Shown here in pieces: positions 3,277-64,000 of a DNA stretch of 64,000 nucleotides. The stretch is taken from positions 303,105-367,104 of the IMG/VR virus record IMGVR_UViG_3300023174_002543, one strand, 5' to 3'. The notes beneath the pieces were generated by a model, which worked only from the letters and a program-made list of their open reading frames with translations, did not search any database and had not been told where the DNA came from. Made by a program: the position numbers and the translations under genes. Every line of letters starts with the position of its first letter. Within the stretch, counting starts at the first letter, position 1.

Positions 3277-3452
3277 GGCATATTCCAGGCATCAAATACA
3301 ATAACAGTACCTACAAAAATTTGCACAAGACCAGTACTAGGTTGACCATAACCAAGTAAAGACATTATACCACTTAGTATACTAAGTGTACCCAATGAAT
3401 ATCCAATTTTTTTACGGTTTTCAGTAAACCAAAATACAAATTTATCAATCAT
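3273..3452 (-). CDS. Small two-TM membrane protein (59 aa, not in ORF track)
   Basis: MIDKFVFWFTENRKKIGYSLGTLSILSGIM...VFDAWNMP*; ATGA overlaps at both ends; AAGGAG RBS. Confidence 0.7.
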   Translation of the reverse strand: MIDKFVFWFTENRKKIGYSLGTLSILSGIMSLLGYGQPSTGLVQIFVGTVIVFDAWNMP

Positions 3453-3631: not shown

Positions 3632-4788
3632 TAGAACGCCTTTAAAATAATCATATTTTCATTAAAGCGTCCTGTTGGTACAGTACCTACTGCTTTAATA
3701 TCTTTAAAATATTTACGTGCCGCGGGCTTACTTCCCATAATTTCTTTAATTTGTTCGCCGGGTTTACGTAGTGTTTTAATTTCACTGGTAGTATTATCAA
3801 ATCCAAGAATCGTATTACCTTTTACAGTAAACGCTTTTGAATAATCATCTGCAATATAGTGATGCAATTTACGCCTTGCAGTGTCATAGACCCATGCCTC
3901 GCTTGCACCATGCAACTTAGTTGGATGTACACTAATCAAGTCAAGTTTATTAGCAGGTTCTTTAAACTCTTTCAAGTACTTAAGTTTGCTAACAATCTTT
4001 TCTACAGGCACTGCCTTCTTTTTGCGAGGTGCTTTACTTGCTTTCTTAATGCTAATATAACTATTGAGGTCACTTAGTACCTGTTCAATGAATTTAAGTG
4101 TATTACGTAATTGGACCTTACCTAAATTGCCATAAGCCTCTTTAAGTTCTTTGTCATCAGTTTCGGATACTTCCTCAAATTCTAATTGTTTCTTCTTCCA
4201 TATCTCAACAATCAATGGAATATGTTGTGGCATGACATTAAATTTTGCAACTAAATCAACTGTCTTTTGCGTTACTTTACCTTCAGTAATAAATTCATCA
4301 AAAATGCCTTCAAGTTCACCTGCCGCATCACGTGCTTTTTCACGCATCAATTCCTGAATGTTAGGGCGATTACTAGGTGCTACTTCTTTTTCAATGACTT
4401 CTGGTTTGTTCACTACTTTAACTAGTCGGCTAATTTCATTTTGTAATGTAAGTTCTTCATGCTCGGTTAATTCTAATCCACGCAATGTCATGCGGGCAAG
4501 CCAACACAATGTCATTAAAAATTCTTTTTCATCAACCTTGCGAATAATCTTGGCATCAGACTCACGATTATTGTGGTCTAAATATTGTGCTAGTAGTTCT
4601 TTGGCGTCTTTTTTTCCATAGAAACGATTGTACCATGTAAAACCATATGTAAGTGCGACTGTACGACTTCCGCCCTCAGGTTGAACTGGAAAAAAGGGCT
4701 CGTCACCCATATACTTTGTATCAGCATCACGCGGATTCAATGCTTTGATAAAGTGGTCTGATGTTGCTTTGGGTTTACGTGTTGCCAT
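3631..4788 (-). CDS. Hypothetical protein, probably early
   Basis: Long ORF; start revised to MATRKPK (AGGAG RBS) downstream of a sigma70-type promoter. Confidence 0.75.
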   Translation of the reverse strand: MATRKPKATSDHFIKALNPRDADTKYMGDEPFFPVQPEGGSRTVALTYGFTWYNRFYGKKDAKELLAQYLDHNNRESDAKIIRKVDEKEFLMTLCWLARMTLRGLELTEHEELTLQNEISRLVKVVNKPEVIEKEVAPSNRPNIQELMREKARDAAGELEGIFDEFITEGKVTQKTVDLVAKFNVMPQHIPLIVEIWKKKQLEFEEVSETDDKELKEAYGNLGKVQLRNTLKFIEQVLSDLNSYISIKKASKAPRKKKAVPVEKIVSKLKYLKEFKEPANKLDLISVHPTKLHGASEAWVYDTARRKLHHYIADDYSKAFTVKGNTILGFDNTTSEIKTLRKPGEQIKEIMGSKPAARKYFKDIKAVGTVPTGRFNENMIILKAF

Positions 4789-8687: not shown

Positions 8688-9689
8688 TTAAGCGTTGTCA
8701 ATCTTTACAGAAGTATTTAATACTGCAGCATCAAAAGACCACGGTACACTTGAATTAGTAGCAAATTGTGTACCTGTGCCACGTGTTAGTGTACAACGAC
8801 GGGCTCCAATTTTAGTAACAAAATATGTACCGCCTGCGCTATCTGTAGCACCAATAGTCATTTTACCGGTATCTGTTGCTGCAGATGAAGACAATGCGCT
8901 AGACTTTAATTCGCAAATTGCAGTACCCGATGTAGTTTTAACTTTGAAACGTTTGGTGCTACGTTGTTTAATGATATCTGCAGGTTGTGCATTTGTGATA
9001 GCATCAGAAATTTTAGCATAACAGAAAATTGCATTTTCTTGATTAGTACTTGAACCAATTGCACCTGTATCAGCAGTCAACACGATTGTACCTGCTGGCG
9101 GTGTAAAAGCTGCACCGTTAGCTAACGTAACTGTAAATGTTTCACCACCGCCGTAACCAGAACCTTTTTCATTGATAACTGTGTTAACAATTTTTAATTG
9201 AATGTCAACCGTAAATGTGGCTGCTCCGGAACCTGTTCTTCTAGTAAGAGCAACGGTTTGCAAGTCTGTTAACAATGAAGTTGTACTACCCGGGGCTGTT
9301 ACTGTGAATAAAGCATTTGCTGCAGCTAAACTACCAACAGTAACTATTAATCCTGGAATACTAGCATATTCGTATGTTTCACCGGTGACTAGTCCAGCTT
9401 TGCCAGCTCCGGTTGTAACTGCTGCCGCACCAAAGTAGTTTGTCCAAGTTGCTTGGACGCCGCCCGGTAATGTTGGAGCTGGTAATTGTAAGCCTGCTAA
9501 CGGAGCGGCTGCGCCACCTGCTGTTGATAACCATGAACCACGATTAGACCAGTTAATTGATGCAATACCTTCGCCACCGATTTTATCGTCTGCTGGAGTG
9601 ATTTGATTACCATTTTCATCAACAGTTAATTGTTGACCACCGGTACCGATGTTGCGGTTACCGAAATATTTTTGATTGATTTTTGCCAT
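8688..9689 (-). CDS. Virion structural protein (Gly/Ala/Thr-rich)
   Basis: Composition, GSGY motif, late promoter, structured leader, downstream terminator. Confidence 0.6.
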   Translation of the reverse strand: MAKINQKYFGNRNIGTGGQQLTVDENGNQITPADDKIGGEGIASINWSNRGSWLSTAGGAAAPLAGLQLPAPTLPGGVQATWTNYFGAAAVTTGAGKAGLVTGETYEYASIPGLIVTVGSLAAANALFTVTAPGSTTSLLTDLQTVALTRRTGSGAATFTVDIQLKIVNTVINEKGSGYGGGETFTVTLANGAAFTPPAGTIVLTADTGAIGSSTNQENAIFCYAKISDAITNAQPADIIKQRSTKRFKVKTTSGTAICELKSSALSSSAATDTGKMTIGATDSAGGTYFVTKIGARRCTLTRGTGTQFATNSSVPWSFDAAVLNTSVKIDNA

Positions 9690-9782
9690 TTTATTTTTCC
9701 TTTATGTTATGGGCGTTCTAGGCCTACGCAGTGGCGTTCTGCGTAAACTCTCGTTTTAAGAGCGAACTATGTATTTATCTTT

Positions 9783-52641: not shown

Positions 52642-53801
52642 TTACTTTTCTCTTTTAGTTTTTCTAGTTTATCATATAAATTCAAACCAGTCAAGTTTAT
52701 TTTGTAACTTAGTGCAAGTAATACACCAAAATTTGGTTGTACTTGCATAGCCTCACCCGGATGTTCATTCTTTGACATATCATATATAAAATTAAATTTT
52801 TTATTCTTCATTAATTGCTTTGAACATTTCTCTCCACGGTCTTTTGCAAAATCCCAAAAAGGTGTGTTGAACTTAGAACCAGCATAGTAATGTAACATTA
52901 TCATACTTTCAATTTCACGTAGTATTTCTAAATAAGAAGCATTATAATCTCTGTATGAGGTCTTACCTGACCATATGTCAATAGCTCCTCGATTAATAAA
53001 ATCCATTACTACAATAGATGTTGCTTCCATTGGTTCTAGAAAAAATGACGCATTACCGTTATATATTACCCTCTTAGAAAAATTCTCTTTTCTAATATAG
53101 TTTTTGAAAGTAAATGCATTAGTAACTTCACTCGGAATTAGGTCTAACTCTGCAAATACATTTTTAACATCTTCTTTGACTTCTTCTAATGTATTGATAG
53201 TATGGTTATACATGTAACCAATCGAACATCTGTTTCTTAGAGGAATAGCAAATATCCAACCATATGGTCTGGCTATTGCAAGTGTGTTATTAAACTTTAC
53301 ATTGTCCCAATAGCATTGTGTAACGTAAACTGCATTTACTGAAATGTAGTCTGACATATAAAAGTCATCATAGTTGTCAGGTTTACCGGAACAATCCATA
53401 ATAAAATCGGCATCAATGTCACTATGTGTTACATTTTTATCAATGATTTTAATATCATCTTTCAGGGCATCTATAACATAAGTTTGAAACTTACCAGCAT
53501 TAAAATGATATCCTACATTAGGCGGGTAAAAGGGGTGAATGAAATCTTTACCGCCCCAATTACGTTTATCTATTCCATATTTTATAGTACCATCTAGTTT
53601 TTCTAAATGGTCAAATGTGAAATTTAAATTATGCCATAATGCATTAGGAAAAGTATTAGTTGATCCTTCACCTACCGGTTGTGGTTTTATGGCGGAATCA
53701 AAATATAGTTCTACCTCGCAGTCTTTCATCCATCTATTAAAATGAGAGACTGCGAGAACCCCTGCAGTACCTGCACCTATTACTGCAATCTTTTTAGCCA
53801 T
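52638..53801 (-). CDS. Tryptophan-halogenase-like flavin-dependent enzyme
   Basis: IGAGTAG, VGEGS, TIKYG, DCSG, GWIFAIPL, FLEPMEATS. Confidence 0.75.
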   Translation of the reverse strand: MAKKIAVIGAGTAGVLAVSHFNRWMKDCEVELYFDSAIKPQPVGEGSTNTFPNALWHNLNFTFDHLEKLDGTIKYGIDKRNWGGKDFIHPFYPPNVGYHFNAGKFQTYVIDALKDDIKIIDKNVTHSDIDADFIMDCSGKPDNYDDFYMSDYISVNAVYVTQCYWDNVKFNNTLAIARPYGWIFAIPLRNRCSIGYMYNHTINTLEEVKEDVKNVFAELDLIPSEVTNAFTFKNYIRKENFSKRVIYNGNASFFLEPMEATSIVVMDFINRGAIDIWSGKTSYRDYNASYLEILREIESMIMLHYYAGSKFNTPFWDFAKDRGEKCSKQLMKNKKFNFIYDMSKNEHPGEAMQVQPNFGVLLALSYKINLTGLNLYDKLEKLKEKSK

Positions 53802-55087
53802 TAATTTTCATCATACAATGCGAATGTACCGAATGGGGGATTCGGATTCTTGTCACCATGAATGATCCAAGTAGTATCGCAATAGTCAGGGTCACCCCAA
53901 GAGCCACAGGGATATCCATCAGTAAACACAATCAAACGTTTTGGTTCAATAGCATTTTTCTTCAAGTAATCAAAGATACAATCAAAGTCAGTGCCACCGC
54001 CACCTTGTGGTTCGTAGTTTTCAATACTTTCCATGTTCTCGCTAGAGAAGTCTTGTGGGTTATATGTATCAGTATCAAAACAGAATACGTGAACCTTGTA
54101 GCCATCAAATGCATCCATCATGCCTGCAATTTCACCCAAGAATGCTTGTGCTTGTTTATTACTAATACTACCTGACATATCAAGTGATACAACAACATCA
54201 ATCTCTTCACCCGGTGTCATACCGGGCATGATAGCATCACTATGCCAACCTCTACGTGAGGGGCGCATCCAACTAAAGTCTGTGCGAATAGCACTAGTCA
54301 AATTAGTTTGAATCAGTTCACGCCAGGGCATGACTGGATTAGTATGTTGTTGAATCAATCGTTCAACACCTTTGGGCATTGTACCTGCCTCTGCACTTTG
54401 TGCGGCACTGATAATTGCTTGTTTGATTTCTTGACGGGTACGTTCACGTTCTTCAGGTGTCATTGGTTTCGGGCGTTTACCTTTACCTTTTTTGTCACCA
54501 TCACCTTCGCTATCGCCCTCACCCTCACCATCTTCACCATCCATGTGGTCATCAAGCAATTGGTCAATCAATGAATCAATGTTGATTTTTTGAACATTCT
54601 TCATCAAGTCATCATAGATTTCTTCAGCAGGTTTACCATCATACTTAGTTTCGTACAAGCAAGGGACTGTGGTAATGAATTGACCAACATTGTGTCGTTT
54701 CAAATCTGCATTAACTGCATAGTCATCAGCAATATTCCAGATTTGAGGATCACGTTCATTTCTACGACCCATGTGGTCATATACAACGTGCAATACTTCG
54801 TGACCAAACAAGAATTCAATTTCTTTTGGTTTCAACATTTTGATAAAACGACTATTGTAATAGAATGTAATGCCATCAGTTGCAGCAGTAGCGCACCATT
54901 CATCAGCATTAACCAATTTCATTCGTGTAGCAAGATTACCAAAGAATGAATGACGCAACAATAGACCAATACGTGCGCCTACTAATAGTTCACGTGCTTG
55001 TGCATCAATCTTAGGATCCATTGGACCGATTAGATTATCAAATTTACTACTACGTTTCTTTTTAGTTGGGGCAATTACATCACTCAT
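53801..55087 (-). CDS. vWA-domain protein with N-terminal HExxH metallopeptidase-like domain (DUF2201-type)
   Basis: TAATDG, HEVLH, DMSGSIS MIDAS, GGGGTDF, FTDG. Confidence 0.85.
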   Translation of the reverse strand: MSDVIAPTKKKRSSKFDNLIGPMDPKIDAQARELLVGARIGLLLRHSFFGNLATRMKLVNADEWCATAATDGITFYYNSRFIKMLKPKEIEFLFGHEVLHVVYDHMGRRNERDPQIWNIADDYAVNADLKRHNVGQFITTVPCLYETKYDGKPAEEIYDDLMKNVQKINIDSLIDQLLDDHMDGEDGEGEGDSEGDGDKKGKGKRPKPMTPEERERTRQEIKQAIISAAQSAEAGTMPKGVERLIQQHTNPVMPWRELIQTNLTSAIRTDFSWMRPSRRGWHSDAIMPGMTPGEEIDVVVSLDMSGSISNKQAQAFLGEIAGMMDAFDGYKVHVFCFDTDTYNPQDFSSENMESIENYEPQGGGGTDFDCIFDYLKKNAIEPKRLIVFTDGYPCGSWGDPDYCDTTWIIHGDKNPNPPFGTFALYDEN

Positions 55088-55113
55088 ATAGACTCCTTTA
55101 TTACAATAACTAT

Positions 55114-55142
55114 ATTATACACTATTATTTAATTATTGTCAA
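55114..55142 (-). promoter_or_regulatory. sigma70-type early promoter
   Basis: TTGACAATAATT...TATAAT, 17-bp spacer. Confidence 0.75.
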
Positions 55143-55309
55143 TTCAATCGCAAGCCACGAAATCCAGCATCATATGCAATTCTAGCATAATCGGGTGCGG
55201 AATCAATCTTATAAAATTCCATACCTTGGTCCTTTGTAAGTCCTTTTGCACGGACACGTTGGCCAATTGCGTAAAAATATTTCTTACCTGATAAAGCGGG
55301 GTTTCTCAT
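55139..55309 (-). CDS. Small hypothetical protein (56 aa, not in ORF track)
   Basis: MRNPALSGKKYFYAIGQRVRAKG...DAGFRGLRLN*; AAAGGA RBS. Confidence 0.6.
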   Translation of the reverse strand: MRNPALSGKKYFYAIGQRVRAKGLTKDQGMEFYKIDSAPDYARIAYDAGFRGLRLN

Positions 55310-55321
55310 TTTAAATCCTTT

Positions 55322-55357
55322 AAAAAAAGGGCGGGAACATTCACACTATCCCCGCCC
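55322..55357 (-). terminator. Intrinsic terminator
   Basis: GGGCGGG...CCCGCCC followed by U7. Confidence 0.7.
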
Positions 55358-55391
55358 GTTAAACGGTGTTTGCACACCGGGAGTCTGTGGA

Positions 55392-56492
55392 TCAGTTACC
55401 TGCTTCCACAATATATTTTCCATACTTCTTATGGAATTCGTCAAAGTTTTTCAATTGAGTTGGTTCAATTGGCAACTCATAAGTCTTCAATGCAATCTTA
55501 GCACCCATAACAGTCAACTCTGTTTCAAAGTTGTTCATCATGTAAGTGAAAAAGTTTTCAGCCATAGAGTGGAACTCTTTACTGTTTACTTTCTTATTGT
55601 CTACTGAATCTTTCAATTCATAGCACATTGCAATGGTCAATGCATACATAGCACTAATCTCTTTGATTGCCAAGTCTTTTACTTTACCTGACAAAATATC
55701 GCTAGGCTCGGGCATACGACCTGCAACTTTGCGGTGTGCTGCAAACTTAACTGCAAGACCTTCACCAACTGCACCTGCAATCAAATTGAATTGAGTATCA
55801 ACATCCATGTTAGCCTCGTCATTCAACAAGTCACTAACGAAACACCAACTACGGGGTGTCGCAAATGCACGGCTTGATGATTTAGCATCAAAGTCATACA
55901 TATCATTTTTTGCAAATGACAAATAACCAACAACGTCTTTATGAACATTGTTATTAACAGCCCAAGTCTGCCATGACGTAAAGTCAGGGCGCATTTCTAA
56001 GTGAATAAAACGATTAGCAAGGGGCATCGGCATACGATAAGTAACACCTTTGTCACTATCACGATTACCTGCCGCAACGATAACGACATTATCGGGCAGT
56101 TTGTATTTACCTACTCGACGGTTAAGAACCAATTGATAACCTGCCGCTTGTACAGCAGGGGGTGCTGAGTTCATTTCATCTAAGAATAGGACAATAACAG
56201 GATATTGCTTTGCAAATTCCTCATCAGGCAAGTCTACTGGGGGTGCCCAATCCATCTTACCATTCTCACGATTAAAGAATGGAATACCTCGAATGTCAGT
56301 AGGTTCCATTTGCGCCATACGCAAATCAATGACATGACCTTTTAGTTCTGCAGCAATCTCTGCAACAACATCACTCTTGCCGATTCCGGGAGGGCCCCAA
56401 AGAAAAACGGGACGTTTAGTTTTGAAGGCACTAAGAATTGCTTTTCGGGTTTGCACACTAGTGATTGTGTGATTGTCGCTAACTGATGCCAT
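55392..56492 (-). CDS. MoxR-like AAA+ ATPase
   Basis: WGPPGIGKS, LFLDEMN, AAGN, PLANRF, ATPRSW. Confidence 0.88.
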   Translation of the reverse strand: MASVSDNHTITSVQTRKAILSAFKTKRPVFLWGPPGIGKSDVVAEIAAELKGHVIDLRMAQMEPTDIRGIPFFNRENGKMDWAPPVDLPDEEFAKQYPVIVLFLDEMNSAPPAVQAAGYQLVLNRRVGKYKLPDNVVIVAAGNRDSDKGVTYRMPMPLANRFIHLEMRPDFTSWQTWAVNNNVHKDVVGYLSFAKNDMYDFDAKSSSRAFATPRSWCFVSDLLNDEANMDVDTQFNLIAGAVGEGLAVKFAAHRKVAGRMPEPSDILSGKVKDLAIKEISAMYALTIAMCYELKDSVDNKKVNSKEFHSMAENFFTYMMNNFETELTVMGAKIALKTYELPIEPTQLKNFDEFHKKYGKYIVEAGN

Positions 56493-56534
56493 TTATGACT
56501 CCTTTAAAAATGACTTGTTGACTTAAGAAACTCT

Positions 56535-56563
56535 ATTGTATAGTAAACTTGATTTATTGTCAA
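56535..56563 (-). promoter_or_regulatory. sigma70-type early promoter
   Basis: TTGACAATAAAT...TACAAT, 17-bp spacer. Confidence 0.75.
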
Positions 56564-57015
56564 GCCCTACTCGCTTTTTGGGCAACTGAATTAATCAGTG
56601 CCTCAACCAATTCACCTTCTCTACGAAAGGCTTCACGTTCCCATGGACGTTTCATATATGAAACTGAGTATTGTTTACCTAACCAAAAACGCTTGTGTTT
56701 ACCGTTACGTGAAGGTGTTGCTTTATATTGACCACGCATGTATTGTTTAGCATGAACCATTTCATGTGCCAATGTCATTAGCATTTGTGGCAATTGTAGT
56801 TGACTGTCAACTGCAATAGTAATTTCTTTATCATCCGTTTTGCTTGCAACGCCGTTATTACCGTCACGTTTCCGCAAATTAGGTGCGCTACAAATATAAA
56901 TTGTATATTTAAAATTTGTAAGGTTCAAGTACTTTGCATAAAACTTTGCAGTCTTATAAAGTAATAGAACCTTTTCAGGGTTTGTGTTACCGTGTGCTAA
57001 TACTTCAACTTTCAT
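56560..57015 (-). CDS. Zn metallopeptidase-like protein
   Basis: TLAHEMVHAKQ, PWEREA. Confidence 0.75.
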   Translation of the reverse strand: MKVEVLAHGNTNPEKVLLLYKTAKFYAKYLNLTNFKYTIYICSAPNLRKRDGNNGVASKTDDKEITIAVDSQLQLPQMLMTLAHEMVHAKQYMRGQYKATPSRNGKHKRFWLGKQYSVSYMKRPWEREAFRREGELVEALINSVAQKASRA

Positions 57016-57017
57016 AA

Positions 57018-57293
57018 TTAACCTCGGTTATCACAATATTCAAACAAAATCCATTTAGCACGATTCAGTGCTTGGCGAACATCTTCAATGACCATGAAAT
57101 CATAAGAGCCGCCGTTGTCGTAAGCAATCATTTCCTGACAATCAGACATGAGGCTAGCTGCCATCATAGCAGGACCTGAATGACGAAAAGTAATACTTTG
57201 CTCTACAGCCTCTTTCATCTCGGCTTCAGTAACGCCATACATGCGAATCTCACGTTTTTGTTTGTCTGTCAGTGCATCGTAAACTGCGGTCAT
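57018..57293 (-). CDS. Early hypothetical protein
   Basis: AAGGAG RBS, directly after an early promoter. Confidence 0.7.
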   Translation of the reverse strand: MTAVYDALTDKQKREIRMYGVTEAEMKEAVEQSITFRHSGPAMMAASLMSDCQEMIAYDNGGSYDFMVIEDVRQALNRAKWILFEYCDNRG

Positions 57294-57323
57294 TGCAAGC
57301 TCCTTTAATTAATCAATACATGT

Positions 57324-57352
57324 ATTATAGACTATAATGGATTTATTGTCAA
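57324..57352 (-). promoter_or_regulatory. sigma70-type early promoter
   Basis: TTGACAATAAAT...TATAAT, 17-bp spacer. Confidence 0.8.
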
Positions 57353-57496
57353 ATTATGGGTGGCTACTAGAGCGAAAGTTGTGTTGTATTATTACAACAA
57401 AAAGGTAATACTTCTGTTTGAAAATGGGTATAAATATAATACTAAATGCTAATGCAAATGTATAATTAATCTATATTACAAGGATTGATGTAGGAT

Positions 57497-57751
57497 TTAG
57501 TACATCAACTTAGCCATCAATAACAACTTCTCTAAGTGGTCAATGGCTTTGTTGATTTTATCTTTTTGACTATCACTATATGTAGTCTTGCGGGTGCGTC
57601 TTGCTTCAACTTCCAACTTGCTGAATTCAACGACCATACTGTCAATATTTTTTAACATCTTACGAAGGTCGGGATTATACCCTATACTTTCTAACTGGTT
57701 ACCAAGTGAGTTTTTAACCTCTTCCCAATCTAATGATGTTTCTACTTTCAC
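57497..57751 (-). CDS. Hypothetical protein
   Basis: 84-aa ORF. Confidence 0.6.
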   Translation of the reverse strand: MKVETSLDWEEVKNSLGNQLESIGYNPDLRKMLKNIDSMVVEFSKLEVEARRTRKTTYSDSQKDKINKAIDHLEKLLLMAKLMY

Positions 57752-57760
57752 AAAACATAT

Positions 57761-58759
57761 TTATGTCTTAGACACTAGGTTATCACGAAATATTTTCCAA
57801 GCATTTTCCCAAGACCAACGATAACTACCCTCTAACACTTTGTGTCTAGGTAAAAATAAACAATCAGTTACTGCTTGTTTTAAGTCTTCGTTCATGCACC
57901 CAGTAACACCCTCATCTATTACATCTTCTGGTCCTTGTACTGGATATGCGGCTACTGGTGTACCGCAAGCCATTGCTTCAATCATAACAATACCAAACGT
58001 TTCCCATTTGCTAGGGAATACAAATACGTCTGCGTTTGCATAATATTGCGCTAATTCTACTCCGGTCTTAAACCCAGTAAAGTGTACGTCAGGATATTGT
58101 TTTTTGTAGGTTTCTAACATTGGCCCATCACCTACCATAACTTTGAGATATTTAGGATAATCCATTTCTAAAAATGCTTCTAAATTTTTCTCTTTACTGA
58201 CCCTACTAACACATACTATATATTTGCTGGTTGTTTCTACTCTATGACTTATATTAAATATTGTTCGGTCAACACCACGTGTCCAGGGAATTATTTCGCC
58301 ATCAAATCCATGTGCTTTTAATTCTGCCACCATACTGTCCGTAGTAGTTAAAACTTTTCCACTGTGCTTGTGAAACCATCTTACTAATGGCCAAGTGATA
58401 AACTCAGGAATGCCAAATAATTTTTTTAACCCCTCAGGAAACTTAGTATGATAAGCGGTATTGTGGCGAATACTACCCAATGAAAGATATGTTCTAGCCC
58501 ACAAACCAAGAGGACCCTCTGTGGCGATATGGATATAATCCGGAGATATCTCCTCAATCTTCTTGCCCAAGTTCCTCGGATAGGCAATCTTGACTTCGTT
58601 GTAGCCAGGGCAATCAATGTAGCGGAACCACCCGGGATCCAACACCACAACGTTATAACCGTCACGAACAGCACACGCCTCAATATTTTTGTAGGTCGTA
58701 ACAACACCATTTATTTGCTCCGGTAAATTATCTGTTATAATTAAGATTGTTTTTGACAT
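57761..58759 (-). CDS. GT4 glycosyltransferase, Agt-like diacylglycerol glycosyltransferase
   Basis: PEQINGVVTT, IHIATEGPLG, TAYHTKFPE, RVSKEKN, ETFGIVMIEAMACGTPV. Confidence 0.85.
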   Translation of the reverse strand: MSKTILIITDNLPEQINGVVTTYKNIEACAVRDGYNVVVLDPGWFRYIDCPGYNEVKIAYPRNLGKKIEEISPDYIHIATEGPLGLWARTYLSLGSIRHNTAYHTKFPEGLKKLFGIPEFITWPLVRWFHKHSGKVLTTTDSMVAELKAHGFDGEIIPWTRGVDRTIFNISHRVETTSKYIVCVSRVSKEKNLEAFLEMDYPKYLKVMVGDGPMLETYKKQYPDVHFTGFKTGVELAQYYANADVFVFPSKWETFGIVMIEAMACGTPVAAYPVQGPEDVIDEGVTGCMNEDLKQAVTDCLFLPRHKVLEGSYRWSWENAWKIFRDNLVSKT

Positions 58760-58914
58760 GAACCCTCTACTTTAAAACTTTTAAATTTTAATTCATATTT
58801 CATTGTTGACAATGTTTGTTCGCAACTCTTTTGGTCGTTGAACAATAGTTCTATTCTTCCTGGTCGATCTTGCGGGTTGTTCATGTGTACTGCTATCAAT
58901 ATCATTAACCACAT
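58741..58914 (-). CDS. Small protein (57 aa) overlapping the plcP 3' end; not in ORF track
   Basis: MWLMILIAVHMNNPQDRPGRIEL...CEQ...EGSCQKQS*; AAGGAG 7 nt upstream. Confidence 0.65.
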   Translation of the reverse strand: MWLMILIAVHMNNPQDRPGRIELLFNDQKSCEQTLSTMKYELKFKSFKVEGSCQKQS

Positions 58915-59668
58915 TATCACGCTCCTTAGTCCAAGTTACTATTTCCCAACGACCATCATGGTGTTCTACTAGTGCTGTGCAACTTTCTACCCAGTCACCA
59001 TCATTCATATATGTAATACCATCTATATCTTTTATCTCAGCATGATGAATGTGTCCACAGATAACCCCATCAAAGCCTCTCTTGCGACAATAGCCAGCAA
59101 GATTATGCTCAAACTGAAACATAAAATCCACGGCTTTTTTAACACGATGCTTAAGATACTTAGACAAACTCCAGTAACCAAAACCCATGCGATGACGAAT
59201 CCAATTAAACTTACTATTAAGAGTGAGTATAAAATCATACAACCTATCTCCCAAGAATCCTAACCAAGGAGCTAGGCGTGTTATACCATCAAACAAATCC
59301 CCATGTACAACTAGATAGTGTTTACCATCTGCTCCTATGTGTTCTATTTGATTGTGTATTTCTATTAAGCCAAAACTAAAACCATATGGTATCATTGGTC
59401 TTAAGAATTCATCGTGATTGCCTGCAATGAATATTACTTTTGTACCACGCTTGGCATGACCTAATACTCTGCGTACTACGTTGGTGTGACTTTGTTTCCA
59501 ACGCCATTTGTTTTGTTGAATCTTCCATGCATCAATTATATCTCCTACAAGATATAATGTTTCGCAAGTATTATGTTTAAGAAAGTTGTTAAGGGATTCG
59601 GCTTTACAATCTTTTGTGCCAAGATGTACATCACTAATAAAAATAGCACGATATGTTCTCTGTGTCAT
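58793..59668 (-). CDS. PlcP-like phospholipase C (LpxH-like metallophosphoesterase)
   Basis: ISDVHLG, YLVGDIID, GNHD, HGD, CGHIH, NDGDWVESCTALVEH; adjacent Agt-like gene and Pho box. Confidence 0.8.
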   Translation of the reverse strand: MTQRTYRAIFISDVHLGTKDCKAESLNNFLKHNTCETLYLVGDIIDAWKIQQNKWRWKQSHTNVVRRVLGHAKRGTKVIFIAGNHDEFLRPMIPYGFSFGLIEIHNQIEHIGADGKHYLVVHGDLFDGITRLAPWLGFLGDRLYDFILTLNSKFNWIRHRMGFGYWSLSKYLKHRVKKAVDFMFQFEHNLAGYCRKRGFDGVICGHIHHAEIKDIDGITYMNDGDWVESCTALVEHHDGRWEIVTWTKERDNVVNDIDSSTHEQPARSTRKNRTIVQRPKELRTNIVNNEI

Positions 59669-59701
59669 GTACATATTTATCGGAAAAATCCGTTATAATG
59701 T

Positions 59702-59719
59702 ATGACAATTCTGTGACAC
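59702..59719 (-). promoter_or_regulatory. Pho box (PhoB site) upstream of plcP-agt
   Basis: GTGTCAC-AGAA-TTGTCAT, two half-sites with 11-bp period. Confidence 0.7.
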
Positions 59720-59727
59720 ACGTAGGT

Positions 59728-59747
59728 AGTCCCGGCTAGCCGGGACT
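59728..59747. terminator. GC-rich perfect inverted repeat (probable terminator or processing hairpin)
   Basis: AGTCCCGG-CTAG-CCGGGACT just after the 59757-59981 ORF; no U-tract. Confidence 0.5.
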
Positions 59748-59756
59748 TGGTTAAAA

Positions 59757-59981
59757 TTACTTTCTAGTTCTAGTATTATCTATACTTGGTTCAATCTTGG
59801 GTTCATCTATGGTGTGTACAGGAGGGTTAACATGCCAGCTGTCTAAAGTAAATATACGTATTGGTTTCCAATATTTACTTAGTAAATTATTAATTACAAC
59901 CGCCGCCCCAATTACTACAATAAAACCTAGTGCAGTTAAAATACTACCTGCCAAAAATACTGCTGATTGATCCATGTTCAT
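59757..59981 (-). CDS. Small single-TM membrane protein
   Basis: Hydrophobic N-terminal helix, KYWKP. Confidence 0.65.
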   Translation of the reverse strand: MNMDQSAVFLAGSILTALGFIVVIGAAVVINNLLSKYWKPIRIFTLDSWHVNPPVHTIDEPKIEPSIDNTRTRK

Positions 59982-59992
59982 GATAATGTTCC

Positions 59993-60121
59993 TTAAATAG
60001 TTTCGTAATCTTCTTTACCTACACCGCATTCCGGGCATAGAAAATCTGCAGGCAAATCTTCCCATTTACCTTCTATTTCTTCATCGTGGATATGTCCACA
60101 TACTACGCATACGTGTTCCAT
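59993..60121 (-). CDS. Rubredoxin (42 aa, not in ORF track)
   Basis: MEHVCVVCGHIHDEEIEGKWEDLPADFLCPECGVGKEDYETI*; CxxCG...CPxCG; TAATG-coupled to rubrerythrin. Confidence 0.9.
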   Translation of the reverse strand: MEHVCVVCGHIHDEEIEGKWEDLPADFLCPECGVGKEDYETI

Positions 60122-60585
60122 TATTGAACCTCCTGTAACATTTTTTGATAAGCAGTAGCATGACGTTCTTCAACTCGTTTTAGTGCAGAGAAACGTTTTT
60201 GTGCTTTGTCTAATACTGCCTTAAATTGTTCAGCGTGTTCTTTGCTTTCTGCAATTTGACCACGCATTTCTTGTGCTACTTCATTAGCACCTTCCATCAT
60301 AGCATCTGCTTCCATGTTAGGATACATAACAGTGAATTCTTGTGTTTCACCTTCAATAGCCTTTTCTAAACATTGCACTGTTGTTGGTTTGCCGATTAGT
60401 AATTCTAAATGCCCCCATGCATGTAGGATTTCTTGGTCTGCGGTATGTTCAAAGTGTTTTGCAACATCCTCGAACCCCTCTTCCCTTGCTATTTTTGCAA
60501 AATAACGATACTTGATATGAGCCATACTCTCACCTGCAAGTGCGTATTCTAAGTTTTTTAGTGTCGCTGATTGATTTTGTGACAT
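60121..60585 (-). CDS. Rubrerythrin (short, di-iron domain only)
   Basis: ALAGESMA, EILHA, EGETQE.TVMYP, ESKEHA, VEERHA. Confidence 0.88.
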   Translation of the reverse strand: MSQNQSATLKNLEYALAGESMAHIKYRYFAKIAREEGFEDVAKHFEHTADQEILHAWGHLELLIGKPTTVQCLEKAIEGETQEFTVMYPNMEADAMMEGANEVAQEMRGQIAESKEHAEQFKAVLDKAQKRFSALKRVEERHATAYQKMLQEVQ

Positions 60586-60698
60586 AGTTTTCCTTTATTC
60601 GAACTGAATTCTACTTTATATTGATAGATAAGTCAACAAGTTTTGGATATATTCCCATTTGTATTAATTGTGTCATATTATACGTCATAAATATCATA

Positions 60699-61358
60699 AT
60701 GAGACCCACAATAGCCCTATTCATTGCTGATCCAAAATGCTCAGTTCAGAGCGGAAATGGTATTATAAAAGCATTGGGAGAACACTATAACTTCAAATTA
60801 TTCTCAAAAAATGCATTAGAAGATAATTTCTTCGAGGGAGTAGATATAGTAGCAGTTCCCGGAGGACTCGGAGATAGTGACAGCTACAATACTCTATTGA
60901 AACATAGTGCAAATCGTATCCGTAAATTTGTTAGTAACGGTGGACGATATCTTGGGATATGTATGGGGGCATATTGGGCTGATAGTCACTACTTCAATAT
61001 ACTAGATGATGTTAGGGTAGTTCAATATATCAAACAACCAAATACTTGTACTAGACGACCACATGCTAAAAACATGCCTGTCATGTGGAAGGATCGATAT
61101 GGTATGGTAGAACCATACAAGATGTTTTTTTATGATGGATGTGCATTAGTAGGTGATAATACTAAATTTGAAACCGTTGCGACTTATAGTAACGGTGATG
61201 CGATGGCTATTATACAAAATCGTATAGGATTAATAGGGTGTCATCCAGAAAGTGAACAGTTTTGGTATGATAGTTACAGTTGGATGCGAGGTTACTATCA
61301 CCGCGGCCAACATCATACACTATTATTAGATTTTGTTAATTCTTTGATGAAGAGGTAA
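60699..61358 (+). CDS. Class I glutamine amidotransferase-like (BPL-N-type) protein
   Basis: VPGG, YLGICMGAY nucleophile elbow, GCHPE; start revised to 60699. Confidence 0.8.
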   Translation: MRPTIALFIADPKCSVQSGNGIIKALGEHYNFKLFSKNALEDNFFEGVDIVAVPGGLGDSDSYNTLLKHSANRIRKFVSNGGRYLGICMGAYWADSHYFNILDDVRVVQYIKQPNTCTRRPHAKNMPVMWKDRYGMVEPYKMFFYDGCALVGDNTKFETVATYSNGDAMAIIQNRIGLIGCHPESEQFWYDSYSWMRGYYHRGQHHTLLLDFVNSLMKR

Positions 61359-61479
61359 CTTCCTCTTTCTTCTTTTCCTTGACTACTGGTTCAGGTAAGT
61401 GAGGAGCAATTACATAATAGTTGGCGCCCCACCAACCTAATGCTGACAAAAATCCTATCACAATATATTCTGCTATCAT
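61336..61479 (-). CDS. Small single-TM protein (47 aa, not in ORF track)
   Basis: MIAEYIVIGFLSALGWWGANYYVIAP...; AAAGGA RBS. Confidence 0.6.
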   Translation of the reverse strand: MIAEYIVIGFLSALGWWGANYYVIAPHLPEPVVKEKKKEEVTSSSKN

Positions 61480-61495
61480 ATTAATCCTTTAAATT

Positions 61496-61519
61496 AAAAA
61501 AGGCTCCTAAGAGCCTTTT
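61496..61519 (-). terminator. Intrinsic terminator
   Basis: AAAAGGCTC-TTAG-GAGCC followed by a U-tract. Confidence 0.85.
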
Positions 61520-61536
61520 ATTAGCATGTTCCTAAA

Positions 61537-62088
61537 TTAGAAACTACGTGTGTACTGTAGACGCCATGCATCTTTTTCTTCATCACCATAGCTACGGCTC
61601 CAACGAACTGCAACTGCATCTTGTTTAGTAAGCGCATAACCTACTGCAACGTGACCGCGTGTGGTTCTGAAACTATTACCAGACTCAAACGCATTGCGAT
61701 AACGAGCACCAACATCACCGGTGAAACCAGCTCCAAGAGGAATCTTAACACCACCATCAACTGCATAATGACTAAAGTGGGTACTGCTAGTTACTTTTTC
61801 ACCCAAACGTCCACCTAAATAGAACATATCGAAAGTTCTTTTGACACGTACTTCTAGTCCTTGAGAAATAGAACCACTGCCATATGCAGTTTGACTATTT
61901 TCCATTTTGATGCTGTAATCCATTGCGCCATCCTTAGTGCCGACAACGATTGCTTCTTTAATATTGTTTGCACCAGTTGTACGATTATTTTCATCAGAAT
62001 ATTCCAATGATGCATAGCCACCTGAGGCCATTGCGGAACCTGCAATCAATAAAGTTGCGAATGTTGTTGCTAGTTTTGTAAATCTCAT
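61537..62088 (-). CDS. Outer-membrane beta-barrel (porin-like) protein
   Basis: Signal peptide ending AMA, alternating beta-strand pattern, C-terminal QYTRSF beta-signal. Confidence 0.75.
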   Translation of the reverse strand: MRFTKLATTFATLLIAGSAMASGGYASLEYSDENNRTTGANNIKEAIVVGTKDGAMDYSIKMENSQTAYGSGSISQGLEVRVKRTFDMFYLGGRLGEKVTSSTHFSHYAVDGGVKIPLGAGFTGDVGARYRNAFESGNSFRTTRGHVAVGYALTKQDAVAVRWSRSYGDEEKDAWRLQYTRSF

Positions 62089-62154
62089 TTTATCTCCTTG
62101 TGTGTTAAATGATTATATATTTATAGTTCGAAATATGACAGAAATAATATTGTC

Positions 62155-62463
62155 TTATTCATTACTATTTGGCAGACCGTTGCTATGGCGATCTCGAACT
62201 TCATCCAAATCTTGAAACAATCTATGTTCCTGTACCGTCAACTTATCCTTATGTGTTTTACGCGGATTACCGCATATATAACATTCTGAATTACCACAAT
62301 CCATTGCATGATGTTTTGATAAACGATGTGGTTCTTTTATGACTTTAGGAGTTATGTCACCCGGGATGTGCGATGCTTTAGCAATTTTAACTTGCTTTTT
62401 AATAGCATTCTCATCCTTGAGTAAACGCTTAGAATGTTTGAATTTATCATGTTCGGTGCTCAT
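62155..62463 (-). CDS. Basic hypothetical protein with Cys cluster
   Basis: DCGNSECYICGNPR. Confidence 0.65.
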   Translation of the reverse strand: MSTEHDKFKHSKRLLKDENAIKKQVKIAKASHIPGDITPKVIKEPHRLSKHHAMDCGNSECYICGNPRKTHKDKLTVQEHRLFQDLDEVRDRHSNGLPNSNE

Positions 62464-62483
62464 AGTTCGTATGATATACTAAA

Positions 62484-63194
62484 CTATGTGATTTGTCTAG
62501 CATTAGCTAACCCAAACAACGTGAATATGGTCAACCACATATAACCCACATCAAATTCATACCACTTCTTGCTTAGGCGAGGACTTGCTGGGTTTAAGTG
62601 GTGATTGTTGTGTAATTCTTCACCGCCAATAATAATACCCCAAGGACTAATGTTTCTGCTATCATCTTTAGTTTCACCATTACGATATCCAATCCAATGT
62701 CCAATGCCGTTAATGACGCCAGCTGCCCAGAATGGTATCCATATCATTTGTATGCCCCATATTAATATTCCCCAATATCCAAAGACTACCGTGTTGAACA
62801 AAAAGAGAATGCTAATGCCAGATCTGGAGTAAGGAGTGTATATGTTGTGCTCCATCCAATCAGAAGGAGTACCAACACCATATGTATCAACCATATCTTT
62901 ATCTTTTGATGCTTCATGGTATAATAATGCTCCTTTAAAAAATACTTGTTTAATTCCGTACACATGCGGGCTGTGTGGATCACCCTCTGTATCACTATAT
63001 CTATGATGCTTACGATGTATTGCTACCCATTGCTTGGTGACCATACCTGTGGTTAACCATAACCAAAAGCGCATGAAGTGACTTAGTATAGGGTGAAAGA
63101 TTATTCCTTTGTGTGCCTGACCTCTATGTAAGAATAGGGTGACACAAATGATAGTAATATGTGTTACTATCAATGTATAGATTATATATGTCAT
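62484..63194 (-). CDS. Delta-9-type fatty acid desaturase
   Basis: Three His boxes HRGQAH, HRKHH, HNNHH; GDPHSP. Confidence 0.92.
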   Translation of the reverse strand: MTYIIYTLIVTHITIICVTLFLHRGQAHKGIIFHPILSHFMRFWLWLTTGMVTKQWVAIHRKHHRYSDTEGDPHSPHVYGIKQVFFKGALLYHEASKDKDMVDTYGVGTPSDWMEHNIYTPYSRSGISILFLFNTVVFGYWGILIWGIQMIWIPFWAAGVINGIGHWIGYRNGETKDDSRNISPWGIIIGGEELHNNHHLNPASPRLSKKWYEFDVGYMWLTIFTLFGLANARQIT

Positions 63195-63225
63195 ACTCTA
63201 TTTAGTTAAAAGAGTATGATTTTGG

Positions 63226-63387
63226 TCATTTTTTTAGTTTATTAATTTTAGGATTTTTACAAGCAGTTGTTCGTTTTTTATCAGAATCCAAAAAGGTGTT
63301 GTTGGTTGACCATCGATATTCACCTGATACTTGCTCATATTTACTCGGTTTACCCAAATTGCTATAACATATTGCACGTTCTTGCAT
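63226..63387 (-). CDS. Small hypothetical protein
   Basis: AGGAG RBS before MQERAIC... Confidence 0.4.
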   Translation of the reverse strand: MQERAICYSNLGKPSKYEQVSGEYRWSTNNTFLDSDKKRTTACKNPKINKLKK

Positions 63388-63436
63388 AAGAATTCTCCTA
63401 TACATATATAACGCCGTAACCATGCTTTCCGTTGAC

Positions 63437-63462
63437 AAAATAAAAGGGCAACTAGTGCCCTT
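63437..63462 (-). terminator. Terminator after pqqA
   Basis: AAGGGCA-CTAGT-TGCCCTT followed by TTATTTT. Confidence 0.75.
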
Positions 63463-63469
63463 CCCCATG

Positions 63470-63541
63470 TTATCGGTTAGCGATATACATAGTGATTTCG
63501 AAACCGAAGCGCATATCGCTTGCTGTAGGTTTTGTCCACAT
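63470..63541 (-). CDS. pqqA: Pyrroloquinoline quinone precursor peptide PqqA (23 aa, not in ORF track)
   Basis: MWTKPTASDMRFGFEITMYIANR*, with W-x-x-P, RFGFE and the E-x3-Y core; AAAGGAG RBS; own terminator. Confidence 0.93.
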   Translation of the reverse strand: MWTKPTASDMRFGFEITMYIANR

Positions 63542-63603
63542 AATTTTCTCCTTTTAAGTTATGCACCGTAGTGCATGACTAGTATAACAGATAACTAAAA
63601 TAT

Positions 63604-63649
63604 TGATATAGAGAAAATCATTAATCTGATATAGAGAAAATCATTAATC
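63604..63649. repeat. Perfect 23-bp tandem duplication upstream of pqqA
   Basis: TGATATAGAGAAAATCATTAATC x2 (63604-63626, 63627-63649). Confidence 0.9.
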
Positions 63650-63672
63650 TATGTTAGTGTTTACACTTAGAG

Positions 63673-63695
63673 AAAAAGGCTCCTAAGAGCCTTTT
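63673..63695 (-). terminator. Terminator after tmRNA, same sequence as the one at 61.5 kb
   Basis: AAAAGGCTC-TTAG-GAGCCTTTTT. Confidence 0.85.
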
Positions 63696-64000
63696 CTGAT
63701 TTTCTGTTACGAGGTATGTCTTACCCTAGGATGCTTTTATCAAGCAGCCAATGCGAACTGTGAGTCGTTTGCGTTTACTTTTTTCGCTTCTTCGGCCGGG
63801 CCTAACGTCTTTCTATGCTATGAGCATAGCGACTATTACTTTTCCCCCAACCCTACGGTTTTCACATTACCGTGCTGTCCACTCTGTTACTACTTGCCCT
63901 GTCGAAACTATGCAGGCCCATCATAAACATACTGTTTGGACTTTTATTATGAGCATTGTTATCTCATTCACCAGTAGACATTATGTTTATGGTGGACCTG
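63696..64000 (-). ncRNA. ssrA: Two-piece (circularly permuted) tmRNA gene; acceptor piece truncated by the window edge
   Basis: ...CAGGTCCACCA (64000-63990), 70-nt spacer, GGGCCTG-CATAGTTTCGAC (from 63919), tag ORF ANDSQFALAA** (63772-63737); G3.U acceptor pair. The 3' end of the coding piece is approximate. Confidence 0.9.

What the first reader, a model, noticed from the sequence alone, without database searches (positions are those of the whole stretch)
63437..63560. Stand-alone pqqA (PQQ precursor peptide) as a phage auxiliary gene
Seen: a 23-codon ORF MWTKPTASDMRFGFEITMYIANR with a strong RBS and its own terminator, below the ORF-caller threshold; no pqqB-E genes in the window. Established: the Glu and Tyr of E-x3-Y are cross-linked by PqqE/PqqD and excised, so PqqA is consumed stoichiometrically for each PQQ made. 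Inference: the phage boosts host PQQ supply, and thus periplasmic alcohol/methanol/sugar dehydrogenase energy flux, by supplying only the RiPP substrate. It could alternatively act as a decoy.
Basis: partly seen in the sequence, partly recalled or inferred. Interest (0 to 1): 0.75.

Follow-up and report, generated by a model that had tools for sequence, protein, structure and literature searches.

The report
Orphan pqqA gene in jumbo phage
The same orphan gene lies unannotated in the nine cultured methylotroph-phage records I checked, so this is a sound but not first example of a kind reported in 2020.

Summary
Window 63470-63541 (- strand) is a 23-codon ORF that passes the curated cut-offs of both PqqA models (Pfam 40.2 bits, NCBIfam 40.4 bits). 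It has an AAGGAG ribosome-binding site and its own terminator.

The window is the last 64 kb of a 367-kb jumbo myophage (IMG/VR record, CheckV 100%, 33 tRNAs). No pqqB-E and no PQQ dehydrogenase were found anywhere in that genome.

The contig end is not host DNA. An independent lake metagenome tiles 60001-63692 exactly at even depth. Related phage contigs carry pqqA internally, beside the same genes and complete phage tmRNAs.

The gene is not rare. At least 120 IMG/VR contigs carry an orphan pqqA, as do Venkman, MEP301, MEP401/402, four Melnitz isolates and P19250A; it is unannotated in all of those. Viral copies are under purifying selection (dN/dS about 0.1-0.2). P19250A's peptide is identical to the three orphan copies in 1.3-Mb methylotroph-like genomes.

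Precursor supply to the host PQQ pathway is the best reading, but it is inferred: the RNA libraries examined gave no reads on pqqA. Phage PqqA was already reported from Lake Baikal in 2020, so this is a new member of a known kind.

The parts
63470..63541 (-). pqqA coding sequence: 23 codons plus TAA stop. Glu15 and Tyr19 are the residues that PqqE cross-links.
   Evidence: ORF list. Pfam PF08042 40.2 bits. NCBIfam TIGR02107 40.4 bits. Only match in the 367-kb genome.
63548..63553 (-). Ribosome-binding site AAGGAG, 6 nt upstream of the ATG.
   Evidence: Read directly from the - strand sequence. AGGA-type sites stand at the same place before pqqA in six other phages and in the bacterial orphan copies.
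63433..63464 (-). Intrinsic-terminator-like hairpin (9 bp, 5-nt loop) followed by a T-run, starting 5 nt after the stop codon.
   Evidence: Terminator scan. RNA fold -13.2 kcal/mol, z -2.1. The bacterial orphan pqqA copies end in the same kind of hairpin.
63561..63576 (-). Small 6-bp hairpin in the 5' leader just upstream of the RBS. Role unknown.
   Evidence: RNA fold of 63545-63600: -12.8 kcal/mol, z -2.5.
63581..63589 (-). Possible extended -10 element (TGT TATACT) that could drive pqqA. Inference only.
   Evidence: Read from the sequence. Not reported by the consensus promoter scan, which needs a -35 match.
63604..63649 (+). Two exact tandem copies of a 23-bp unit between the tmRNA terminator and pqqA. 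They occur nowhere else in the genome.
   Evidence: Fuzzy search of the whole genome. Sequence.
63671..64000 (-). 3' two-thirds of a phage-borne beta-type two-piece tmRNA (tag ANDSQFALAA) with its own terminator hairpin at 63674-63695. Its 5' part is cut off by the contig end. It lies directly upstream of pqqA on the same strand.
   Evidence: Rfam RF04321 52.1 bits, over its gathering score. RF01850 55 bits, truncated. Complete homologues lie inside related viral contigs. Terminator.

Best explanation
This is a genuine phage-encoded orphan pqqA mini-gene, built from its own RBS, 23 codons and a terminator. It lies in the accessory-gene, tRNA and tmRNA part of a 367-kb freshwater jumbo myophage.

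Proposed mechanism:
1. During infection the peptide is translated.
2. The host's own PQQ machinery takes it up: PqqD binds it, PqqE cross-links Glu15 to Tyr19, and host proteases, PqqB and PqqC finish the cofactor.
3. One PqqA is destroyed for every PQQ made, and the host mRNA for such a short peptide would fade once the phage takes over. The phage copy therefore keeps up, or raises, the flow of the one consumable in the pathway.
4. That sustains the PQQ-dependent periplasmic dehydrogenases (XoxF-type methanol or other alcohol dehydrogenases) that feed the cell's energy budget while virions are made.

Shown: gene identity, phage location, absence of the pathway enzymes from the phage, recurrence across unrelated phages, purifying selection, and identity of one phage's peptide with bacterial orphan copies.

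Inferred: expression during infection, acceptance by the host's PqqD/E, and any effect on PQQ level or phage yield.
For: Identity:
- Both curated PqqA models are passed about two-fold over their cut-offs.

Phage location:
- TerL, tail sheath, DnaB and virion proteins are in the window.
- The record is a 367-kb single contig, CheckV 100%, with 33 clustered tRNAs.
- No tyrosine integrase was found.

The contig end is not host DNA:
- An independent lake metagenome (X2) gives zero-difference contigs of 17-19x that tile 60001-63692 across pqqA, apart from short gaps between contigs, and stop only where tmRNA depth jumps to 300-4000x.
- Related viral contigs L112, L120/L247 and L246 hold pqqA next to the same glycosyltransferase, metallophosphatase, rubrerythrin and 102-aa genes.
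- A 356-kb relative (TerL 55% identical) has pqqA 5.9 kb inside its contig.
- Complete two-piece tmRNAs lie inside these contigs near pqqA. In L083 and L077 the order and strand match the window.

Stand-alone:
- No PqqB, C, D or E in the genome or in 120 viral pqqA loci, against 67 of 120 bacterial loci.
- No XoxF or PQQ-domain protein.

Recurrence:
All 119 parsed are intact PqqA ORFs.
- Nine cultured methylotroph-phage records of four unlike genome sizes carry it, each with an RBS.

Selection:
- 100 distinct nucleotide versions encode 43 peptides.
- dN/dS is 0.11 overall and 0.21 in codons the search pattern did not fix.

Host logic:
- Two 1.3-Mb, roughly 36-39% GC genomes each keep three dispersed orphan pqqA copies of the same mini-gene design, plus PqqE and a PQQ alcohol/methanol dehydrogenase.
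- Their peptide is identical to that of phage P19250A.
- Methylophilaceae carry 3-12 pqqA copies but single copies of pqqB-G (PMC4109929).
- Purified PqqA added to cell extract is converted to PQQ (cited in PMC9851590).
Against: - No expression evidence. In three RNA libraries the bin holding pqqA had depth 0; only tmRNA fragments matched exactly, and DNA carry-over cannot be excluded.
- The host of this phage is not identified. The window peptide matches no bacterial peptide in my samples over its full length. Its last 19 residues equal those of Albidiferax/Rhodoferax, but its N-terminus does not. Recognition by a host PqqD is therefore assumed.
- Candidate hosts already have several pqqA copies, and PQQ is a reusable cofactor, so the need for extra precursor within one infection cycle is not obvious.
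- Engineering work summarised in PMC9851590 found that overexpressing one or a few pqq genes gives little extra PQQ.
- The core motif in the IMG/VR set was fixed by my search pattern, so conservation there is partly by construction.
Confidence: 0.6

Rival explanations
1. The last kilobase of the contig is host chromosome or a chimeric join, for example a prophage-host junction at the tmRNA gene. On this reading pqqA belongs to the bacterium, not the phage.
For: pqqA is only about 460 bp from the contig end. It sits next to a tmRNA, a classic prophage integration site, and that tmRNA is cut by the contig end. The GC content of pelagic methylotroph-like genomes (36-39%) would not differ from the phage's 36.5%.
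Against: - Exact, even-depth contigs from an independent study run from the phage's rubrerythrin gene through pqqA.
- pqqA is internal and syntenic with phage genes in several related viral contigs.
- Complete two-piece tmRNAs lie inside those contigs.
- None of 120 bacterial pqqA loci has a tmRNA nearby.
- None of five candidate host genomes has a beta-type two-piece tmRNA over the cut-off.
- No integrase in the 367 kb.
- Cultured, purified phages carry the same gene.
Confidence: 0.03
2. The peptide is made but does not feed PQQ synthesis. It might act as a decoy that ties up PqqD/E and lowers host PQQ. It might be modified into something else, or serve as a signal.
For: Nothing positive. It remains open because no biochemical test exists, and because the window peptide's N-terminal leader differs from every bacterial peptide sampled. 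The genome also holds an unassigned 476-aa radical-SAM protein.
Against: - Glu and Tyr are kept in every phage copy, including the ten phage records found by tblastn without a motif filter.
- P19250A's peptide is identical to three orphan copies in each of two 1.3-Mb methylotroph-like genomes, and a decoy identical to the substrate is a substrate.
- The phage radical-SAM protein has no SPASM or PqqD domain, lies about 360 kb away, and sits beside a desaturase.
Confidence: 0.12
3. The gene is a neutral passenger or recombination relic. It could be a short host mini-gene picked up together with tRNA and tmRNA cargo, or the remains of an attachment site in host pqqA. On this reading it has no role in infection.
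For: - Bacterial orphan copies are self-contained cassettes of about 150 bp that would be easy to capture.
- In large phages pqqA tends to lie near tRNA or tmRNA genes: 8 of 119 viral loci within 2 kb, against 0 of 120 bacterial loci.
- In small phages it lies in recombination modules.
Against: - It is kept intact with an RBS in phages as unlike as 35-kb siphoviruses, 43-kb Zobellviridae, a 141-kb T4-like myovirus and 350-kb jumbo phages.
- dN/dS is 0.1-0.2 while synonymous sites are near saturation.
- Nucleotide identity between phage copies is only 65-86%, which is not what an att core shared with the host would show.
- No integrase in this genome.
Confidence: 0.15

Closest known systems
Bacterial PqqA (Pfam PF08042, NCBIfam TIGR02107), especially the orphan extra copies of Methylophilaceae
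   Same: - Same length and the same W-x-x-P leader.
- Same R-F-G-F-E-[VI]-T-M-Y core with the cross-linked Glu and Tyr.
- Same mini-gene design: RBS, about 23 codons, then a terminator.
- Bacterial orphan copies also lie far from pqqB-E. Methylophilaceae carry 3-12 such copies (PMC4109929).
   Different: It is encoded by a virus that has none of the pathway enzymes. The window's peptide is not identical over its full length to any bacterial copy I sampled.
PqqA reported in Lake Baikal viral population VP_266 (Coutinho et al. 2020, PMC7678222)
   Same: A freshwater, roughly 35% GC, T4-like or large phage predicted to infect Methylophilaceae. It was annotated with PqqA and interpreted as a metabolic gene that boosts PQQ supply.
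   Different: VP_266 also carries a methanol dehydrogenase; this genome carries none. That paper treated PqqA as a single case and stated that the cultured phage P19250A lacks these genes, whereas P19250A does carry an unannotated pqqA. I could not compare the sequences directly.
Unannotated pqqA of cultured methylotroph phages (Venkman, MEP301, MEP401/402, Melnitz, P19250A)
   Same: An orphan 23-24-codon pqqA with an RBS and no pqqB-E. These peptides are 65-73% identical to the window's. In Melnitz the gene abuts a tRNA, echoing the tmRNA neighbour here.
   Different: Their peptides are of the pelagic Methylophilaceae type (…TEMRFGFEVTMYVMNK). The window's is of the …SDMRFGFEITMYIANR type seen in Comamonadaceae, Rhodocyclaceae and Burkholderiaceae. 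The genomes are unrelated in size and architecture.
Cyanophage psbA (D1 protein), as a functional analogy from established knowledge and not tested here
   Same: The phage carries only the fastest-consumed part of the host's energy-harvesting machinery and leaves the rest to the host.
   Different: psbA encodes a structural and catalytic protein of the complex. pqqA encodes a sacrificial substrate peptide for cofactor synthesis. There is no sequence or structural relation.

Membership tests
PqqA precursor peptide (PF08042 / TIGR02107) | Scores above the curated cut-off of the family models | tested here: met
   Pfam 40.2 bits against 21.1. NCBIfam equivalog 40.4 bits against 20.
PqqA precursor peptide (PF08042 / TIGR02107) | Short peptide (about 20-30 aa) with a conserved Glu-x3-Tyr pair that becomes the PQQ skeleton | tested here: met
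   23 aa, with Glu15 and Tyr19 in …GFEITMY…. Both residues are invariant in 100 distinct viral sequences, though the search pattern required them. They are also present in all phage hits found by tblastn.
PqqA precursor peptide (PF08042 / TIGR02107) | Translatable gene with its own start signals | tested here: met
   ATG start, AAGGAG 6 nt upstream, and a terminator after the stop.
PqqA precursor peptide (PF08042 / TIGR02107) | Lies at the head of a pqqABCDE operon (the classical context) | tested here: not met
   No pqqB-E in the 367-kb genome. This context is not obligatory: 53 of 120 bacterial pqqA loci showed no neighbouring pqqB-E, and two 1.3-Mb genomes have three orphan copies each.
PqqA precursor peptide (PF08042 / TIGR02107) | Bound by PqqD, cross-linked by PqqE and converted to PQQ | not testable with these tools
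   This needs biochemistry or genetics.
Phage auxiliary metabolic gene | Encoded within a bona fide viral genome, not in flanking host DNA | tested here: met
   Phage hallmark genes. Even-depth exact tiling in an independent metagenome. Synteny in related viral contigs. Presence in cultured phages.
Phage auxiliary metabolic gene | Homologue of a host metabolic gene, with the host carrying the rest of the pathway | tested here: inconclusive
   The homology is clear. Candidate host lineages carry PqqE and PQQ dehydrogenases. The host of this particular phage is not identified.
Phage auxiliary metabolic gene | Expressed during infection and altering host metabolism | tested here: inconclusive
   Three RNA libraries gave no reads on pqqA, but the phage is barely present in them. 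No infection data exist.

The most novel reading that the evidence does not exclude
Orphan pqqA is a near-universal, host-tracking hallmark of phages that infect PQQ-dependent betaproteobacteria. At 23 codons it would be the smallest auxiliary metabolic gene, and the only one I know of that encodes a sacrificial substrate rather than an enzyme or structural protein. Its repeated capture by unrelated phages would mean that, once host gene expression is taken over, the precursor peptide is the limiting consumable for PQQ-dependent energy metabolism. It could also serve as a marker for assigning uncultured phages to methylotroph or other PQQ-using hosts.
Probability: 0.4. Interest if true: 0.65.

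Novelty: new member of a known kind. Interest (0 to 1): 0.45.

Why it matters
- Methanol oxidation by OM43 and LD28-type bacteria is a sizeable carbon flux in coastal seas and lakes. XoxF, which needs PQQ, is their most expressed gene (PMC5120137).
- If phages sustain PQQ synthesis with nothing more than the precursor peptide, that shows which step of cofactor supply fails first in an infected cell.
- It would add a new class of auxiliary gene: a consumable substrate.
- It also exposes a blind spot. The gene is too short for gene callers, so it has gone unannotated in all nine cultured methylotroph-phage records found here and in at least a hundred IMG/VR contigs.
- Because cultured phage-host pairs already exist, the hypothesis can be tested directly.

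Tried and rejected
Tools that could not take the peptide:
I used degenerate DNA patterns instead.
- Exact look-up of the window and MEP301 peptides in the 15-billion-protein collection found neither, presumably because such short ORFs are not called.

Contig end:
- ARAGORN on the contig end joined to the contig start found no tmRNA. BLAST found no 5' tmRNA piece at the start. The record does not simply close on itself there.

Host assignment (all inconclusive):
- BLAST of the tmRNA against 401 Burkholderiales genomes gave only 20-46-nt matches and nothing in five named candidates.
- RF01850 is not over its cut-off in five candidate hosts. That argues against a host origin of the tmRNA but does not name a host.
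- By peptide type the host looks Comamonadaceae- or Rhodocyclaceae-like. By GC content, habitat and analogy it looks Methylophilaceae-like.

Expression:
- Laying three RNA libraries gave exact pieces only of the tmRNA and none on pqqA. This is uninformative because the phage is nearly absent from those runs.

Other checks:
- The TIGR02111 (PqqC) search rang in no control genome, so its blank is worthless. tblastn with a verified PqqC replaced it.
- The weak PqqE-model hit in the genome is a generic radical-SAM protein without SPASM or PqqD domains.
- The two 'Acinetobacter phage MD-2021a' hits are bacterial contigs with a full pqqABCDE operon, not phage.
- No complex or structure prediction was run.

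Full report
THE OBSERVATION

Window 63470-63541 (- strand) is a 23-codon ORF reading MWTKPTASDMRFGFEITMYIANR.
- It matches Pfam PqqA (PF08042) over the whole profile at 40.2 bits (cut-off 21.1, E 3e-10).
- It matches the NCBIfam equivalog TIGR02107 at 40.4 bits (cut-off 20).
- tblastn of the peptide on the whole genome finds this one site at E 8e-13 and nothing else below E 2.
- AAGGAG lies 6 nt before the ATG.
- A 9-bp hairpin plus T-run begins 5 nt after the stop codon. It folds at -13.2 kcal/mol.

WHAT THE WINDOW IS

The window is the last 64 kb of a single 367,104-bp IMG/VR virus record, classed linear, with a CheckV completeness of 100%. The record has 36.5% GC and 33 tRNA genes clustered at 155-170 kb.

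The window itself encodes a large terminase, a tail sheath, virion structural proteins, a DnaB-type helicase and another helicase. It is a jumbo myophage. No tyrosine integrase was found in the genome.

STAND-ALONE STATUS

The whole genome has no PqqD domain. Its only match to the PqqE model is a 16.7-bit generic radical-SAM hit. That protein has Radical_SAM and Fer4_12 domains only and sits beside a second fatty-acid desaturase.

I took PqqB, PqqC and a PqqD-E fusion from an Albidiferax pqqABC(D)E operon and confirmed them with NCBIfam. tblastn with them finds nothing in the phage genome and nothing in 120 viral pqqA loci. It does hit 67 of 120 bacterial pqqA loci.

No PQQ-domain dehydrogenase is present either.

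IS THE CONTIG END HOST DNA?

pqqA lies about 460 bp from the end. Directly upstream on the same strand is a beta-type two-piece tmRNA (tag ANDSQFALAA) whose 5' part is cut off by the contig end. A tmRNA is a classic prophage integration site, so the worry is fair. Five results answer it.

1. In an independent lake metagenome (run X2, another study), zero-difference contigs of even 17-19x depth tile 60001-63692, apart from short gaps between contigs. That stretch runs from the rubrerythrin gene through pqqA. The contigs stop exactly where depth jumps to 300-4000x, because conserved tmRNA segments are shared with abundant organisms. The contig end is therefore an assembly break in a conserved RNA gene.
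2. Related viral contigs carry pqqA internally beside the same genes:
   - L112 and L120/L247: GT4 glycosyltransferase, metallophosphatase, rubrerythrin.
   - L246: the 102-aa ORF and the MoxR/VWA pair.
   - A 356-kb relative (TerL 55% identical, CheckV 96%): pqqA lies 5.9 kb inside its contig.
3. Complete two-piece tmRNAs lie inside these viral contigs. In L083 and L077 the tmRNA is followed by pqqA on the same strand, as in the window.
4. None of 120 bacterial pqqA loci has a tmRNA nearby. None of five candidate host genomes has a beta-type two-piece tmRNA over the cut-off.
5. Cultured phages carry the same gene (see the next section).

HOW COMMON IT IS

All 119 that I parsed are intact 23-25-residue PqqA ORFs.

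tblastn of the window peptide against 50,697 phage records gave twelve hits.
- Nine are cultured Methylophilales or Methylophilaceae phages: Venkman, MEP301, MEP401, MEP402, four Melnitz isolates, and the freshwater LD28 phage P19250A.
- One is an uncultured podovirus.
- Two are mislabelled bacterial contigs with a full pqqABCDE operon.

In every real phage record the ORF is either unannotated or overlapped by a 'hypothetical protein' call; in Melnitz and the podovirus that call is on the opposite strand. Each copy has an AGGA-type RBS.

The papers describing MEP301, MEP401/402 and Melnitz never mention pqqA. I did not check whether the collection holds other methylotroph phages that lack the gene.

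SELECTION

Among 109 viral 23-codon copies there are 100 distinct nucleotide sequences but only 43 peptides. Pooled dN/dS is 0.11. For the codons that my search pattern did not constrain it is 0.21. Synonymous differences are near saturation (pS 0.54-0.70). The peptide is being kept, not the DNA.

HOSTS

In a sample of 401 Burkholderiales genomes, 76 carry the M-R-F-G-F-E-[VI]-T-M-Y motif, many in several copies.

- Each has three dispersed orphan pqqA genes.
- Every copy is an RBS, 23 codons and a terminator.
- Each genome also has one PqqE elsewhere and a PQQ-dependent alcohol/methanol dehydrogenase over its cut-off.
- Their peptide, MWTTPAATEMRFGFEVTMYVMNK, is identical to that of phage P19250A and is among the commonest IMG/VR types.

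Published work notes that Methylophilaceae carry 3-12 pqqA copies but single copies of the other pqq genes (PMC4109929).

The window's peptide differs from that type at 8 of 23 positions. Its last 19 residues are identical to those of Albidiferax/Rhodoferax, and the last 17 to many Comamonadaceae, Limnobacter and Rhodocyclaceae.

The host of this jumbo phage is thus a PQQ-making betaproteobacterium (GTDB Burkholiderales in the broad sense), but I cannot say which family. The peptide type points to Comamonadaceae or Rhodocyclaceae. GC content, habitat and analogy with cultured phages point to Methylophilaceae. The 33 tRNAs would fit a host of different base composition.

MECHANISM

Established knowledge (Barr et al. 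2016 and Zhu and Klinman 2020, as cited) is that PqqD presents PqqA to the radical-SAM enzyme PqqE. PqqE links the Glu and Tyr, and one peptide is consumed for each PQQ made.

The best-supported reading is that the phage supplies this consumable so that host enzymes keep producing PQQ for XoxF-type or other quinoprotein dehydrogenases during infection. Four lines of evidence favour it:
- Repeated independent retention in unrelated phages.
- Purifying selection.
- Identity of one phage's peptide with bacterial orphan copies.
- The hosts' own habit of amplifying only pqqA.

Three points count against certainty:
- No RNA evidence. Depth was 0 on pqqA in three RNA libraries in which the phage is almost absent.
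- The host is unknown.
- Overexpressing single pqq genes has raised PQQ only modestly in engineering studies.

A decoy role is unlikely, because a peptide identical to the substrate is a substrate. An att-site relic is unlikely given 65-86% nucleotide identity among phage copies, lytic T4-like carriers, and the absence of an integrase.

COMPARISON AND NOVELTY

Coutinho et al. 2020 (PMC7678222) annotated PqqA in the Lake Baikal population VP_266, together with a methanol dehydrogenase, and proposed that it boosts PQQ supply. A 2026 reservoir study lists viral pqqA, pqqD and pqqE among phosphorus-cycling genes. The idea is therefore in print, and this window is a new member of a known kind.

What my searches add:
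- The gene is widespread, in at least 120 IMG/VR contigs.
- It is present but unannotated in the nine cultured methylotroph-phage records, including P19250A, which the Baikal paper said lacked such genes.
- Phage peptides track host peptide types.
- In large phages the gene tends to sit among tRNA and tmRNA genes: 8 of 119 viral loci within 2 kb, against 0 of 120 bacterial loci.

VERDICT

The novelty is modest for the gene itself. Interest is moderate because the hypothesis can be tested directly in existing phage-host cultures.

Noticed in passing
window 63671-64000 (-): A phage-borne beta-type two-piece (permuted) tmRNA with tag ANDSQFALAA, cut by the contig end. Complete relatives lie inside other large freshwater viral contigs (L083, L077, L040, L247, L248). 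Five candidate host genomes have no tmRNA of this type over the cut-off, echoing the mismatch reported for phage Melnitz.
   Followed up: partly
window 63604-63649 (+): Two exact tandem copies of a 23-bp unit between the tmRNA terminator and pqqA. They are found nowhere else in the 367-kb genome. They could be an operator or promoter element.
   Followed up: partly
window 9687-9763 (-): A match to the Rfam 'freshwater-2' cis-regulatory RNA motif (53.8 bits, over its gathering score). It lies just upstream of the 333-aa ORF at 8688-9689 on the same strand.
   Followed up: no
window 62484-63194 (-) and genome 5243-6103 (L002 2010-2870, -): Two fatty-acid desaturase genes in one phage. One is the immediate neighbour of pqqA (DesA-family, 390.8 bits, just under the 400-bit cut-off). 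The other sits beside a 476-aa radical-SAM protein at the opposite end of the contig.
   Followed up: partly
window 53801-61358: A run of host-like accessory genes: a DUF2201 metallopeptidase-VWA protein with a MoxR-type AAA ATPase, a GT4 glycosyltransferase, a metallophosphatase, a rubrerythrin and a class-I glutamine-amidotransferase-like protein. It is partly syntenic in related viral contigs (L112, L120, L246).
   Followed up: partly
genome 155234-170028 (outside the window): 33 tRNA genes in a 15-kb cluster. This suggests the phage's codon usage differs from its host's. Related contigs (L040, L246, L248) have similar arrays, with pqqA at their edge.
   Followed up: no
L255 (Melnitz MZ577097) 4995-5069; L256 (P19250A KX815270) 4001-4072; L257 (Venkman MT375522) 4001-4072; L001 (MEP301) 3313-3384; L264 (MEP402) 621-692: Intact pqqA ORFs with an RBS in cultured methylotroph phages, unannotated in the records. 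In Melnitz a 'hypothetical protein' is called on the opposite strand over it, and the gene abuts tRNA-Leu. The Lake Baikal paper's statement that P19250A has none of these metabolic genes does not hold for pqqA.
   Followed up: yes
L262 (CAKLQF020000010.1, 'Acinetobacter phage MD-2021a'): This record in the phage collection is a bacterial chromosomal contig carrying fur, ppk and pqqABCDE. It is not a phage.
   Followed up: yes
L295-L300 (genomes G187 and G383): Two streamlined 1.3-Mb genomes each keep three dispersed, identical-peptide orphan pqqA mini-genes far from pqqE. That is striking redundancy for genomes of this size.
   Followed up: partly
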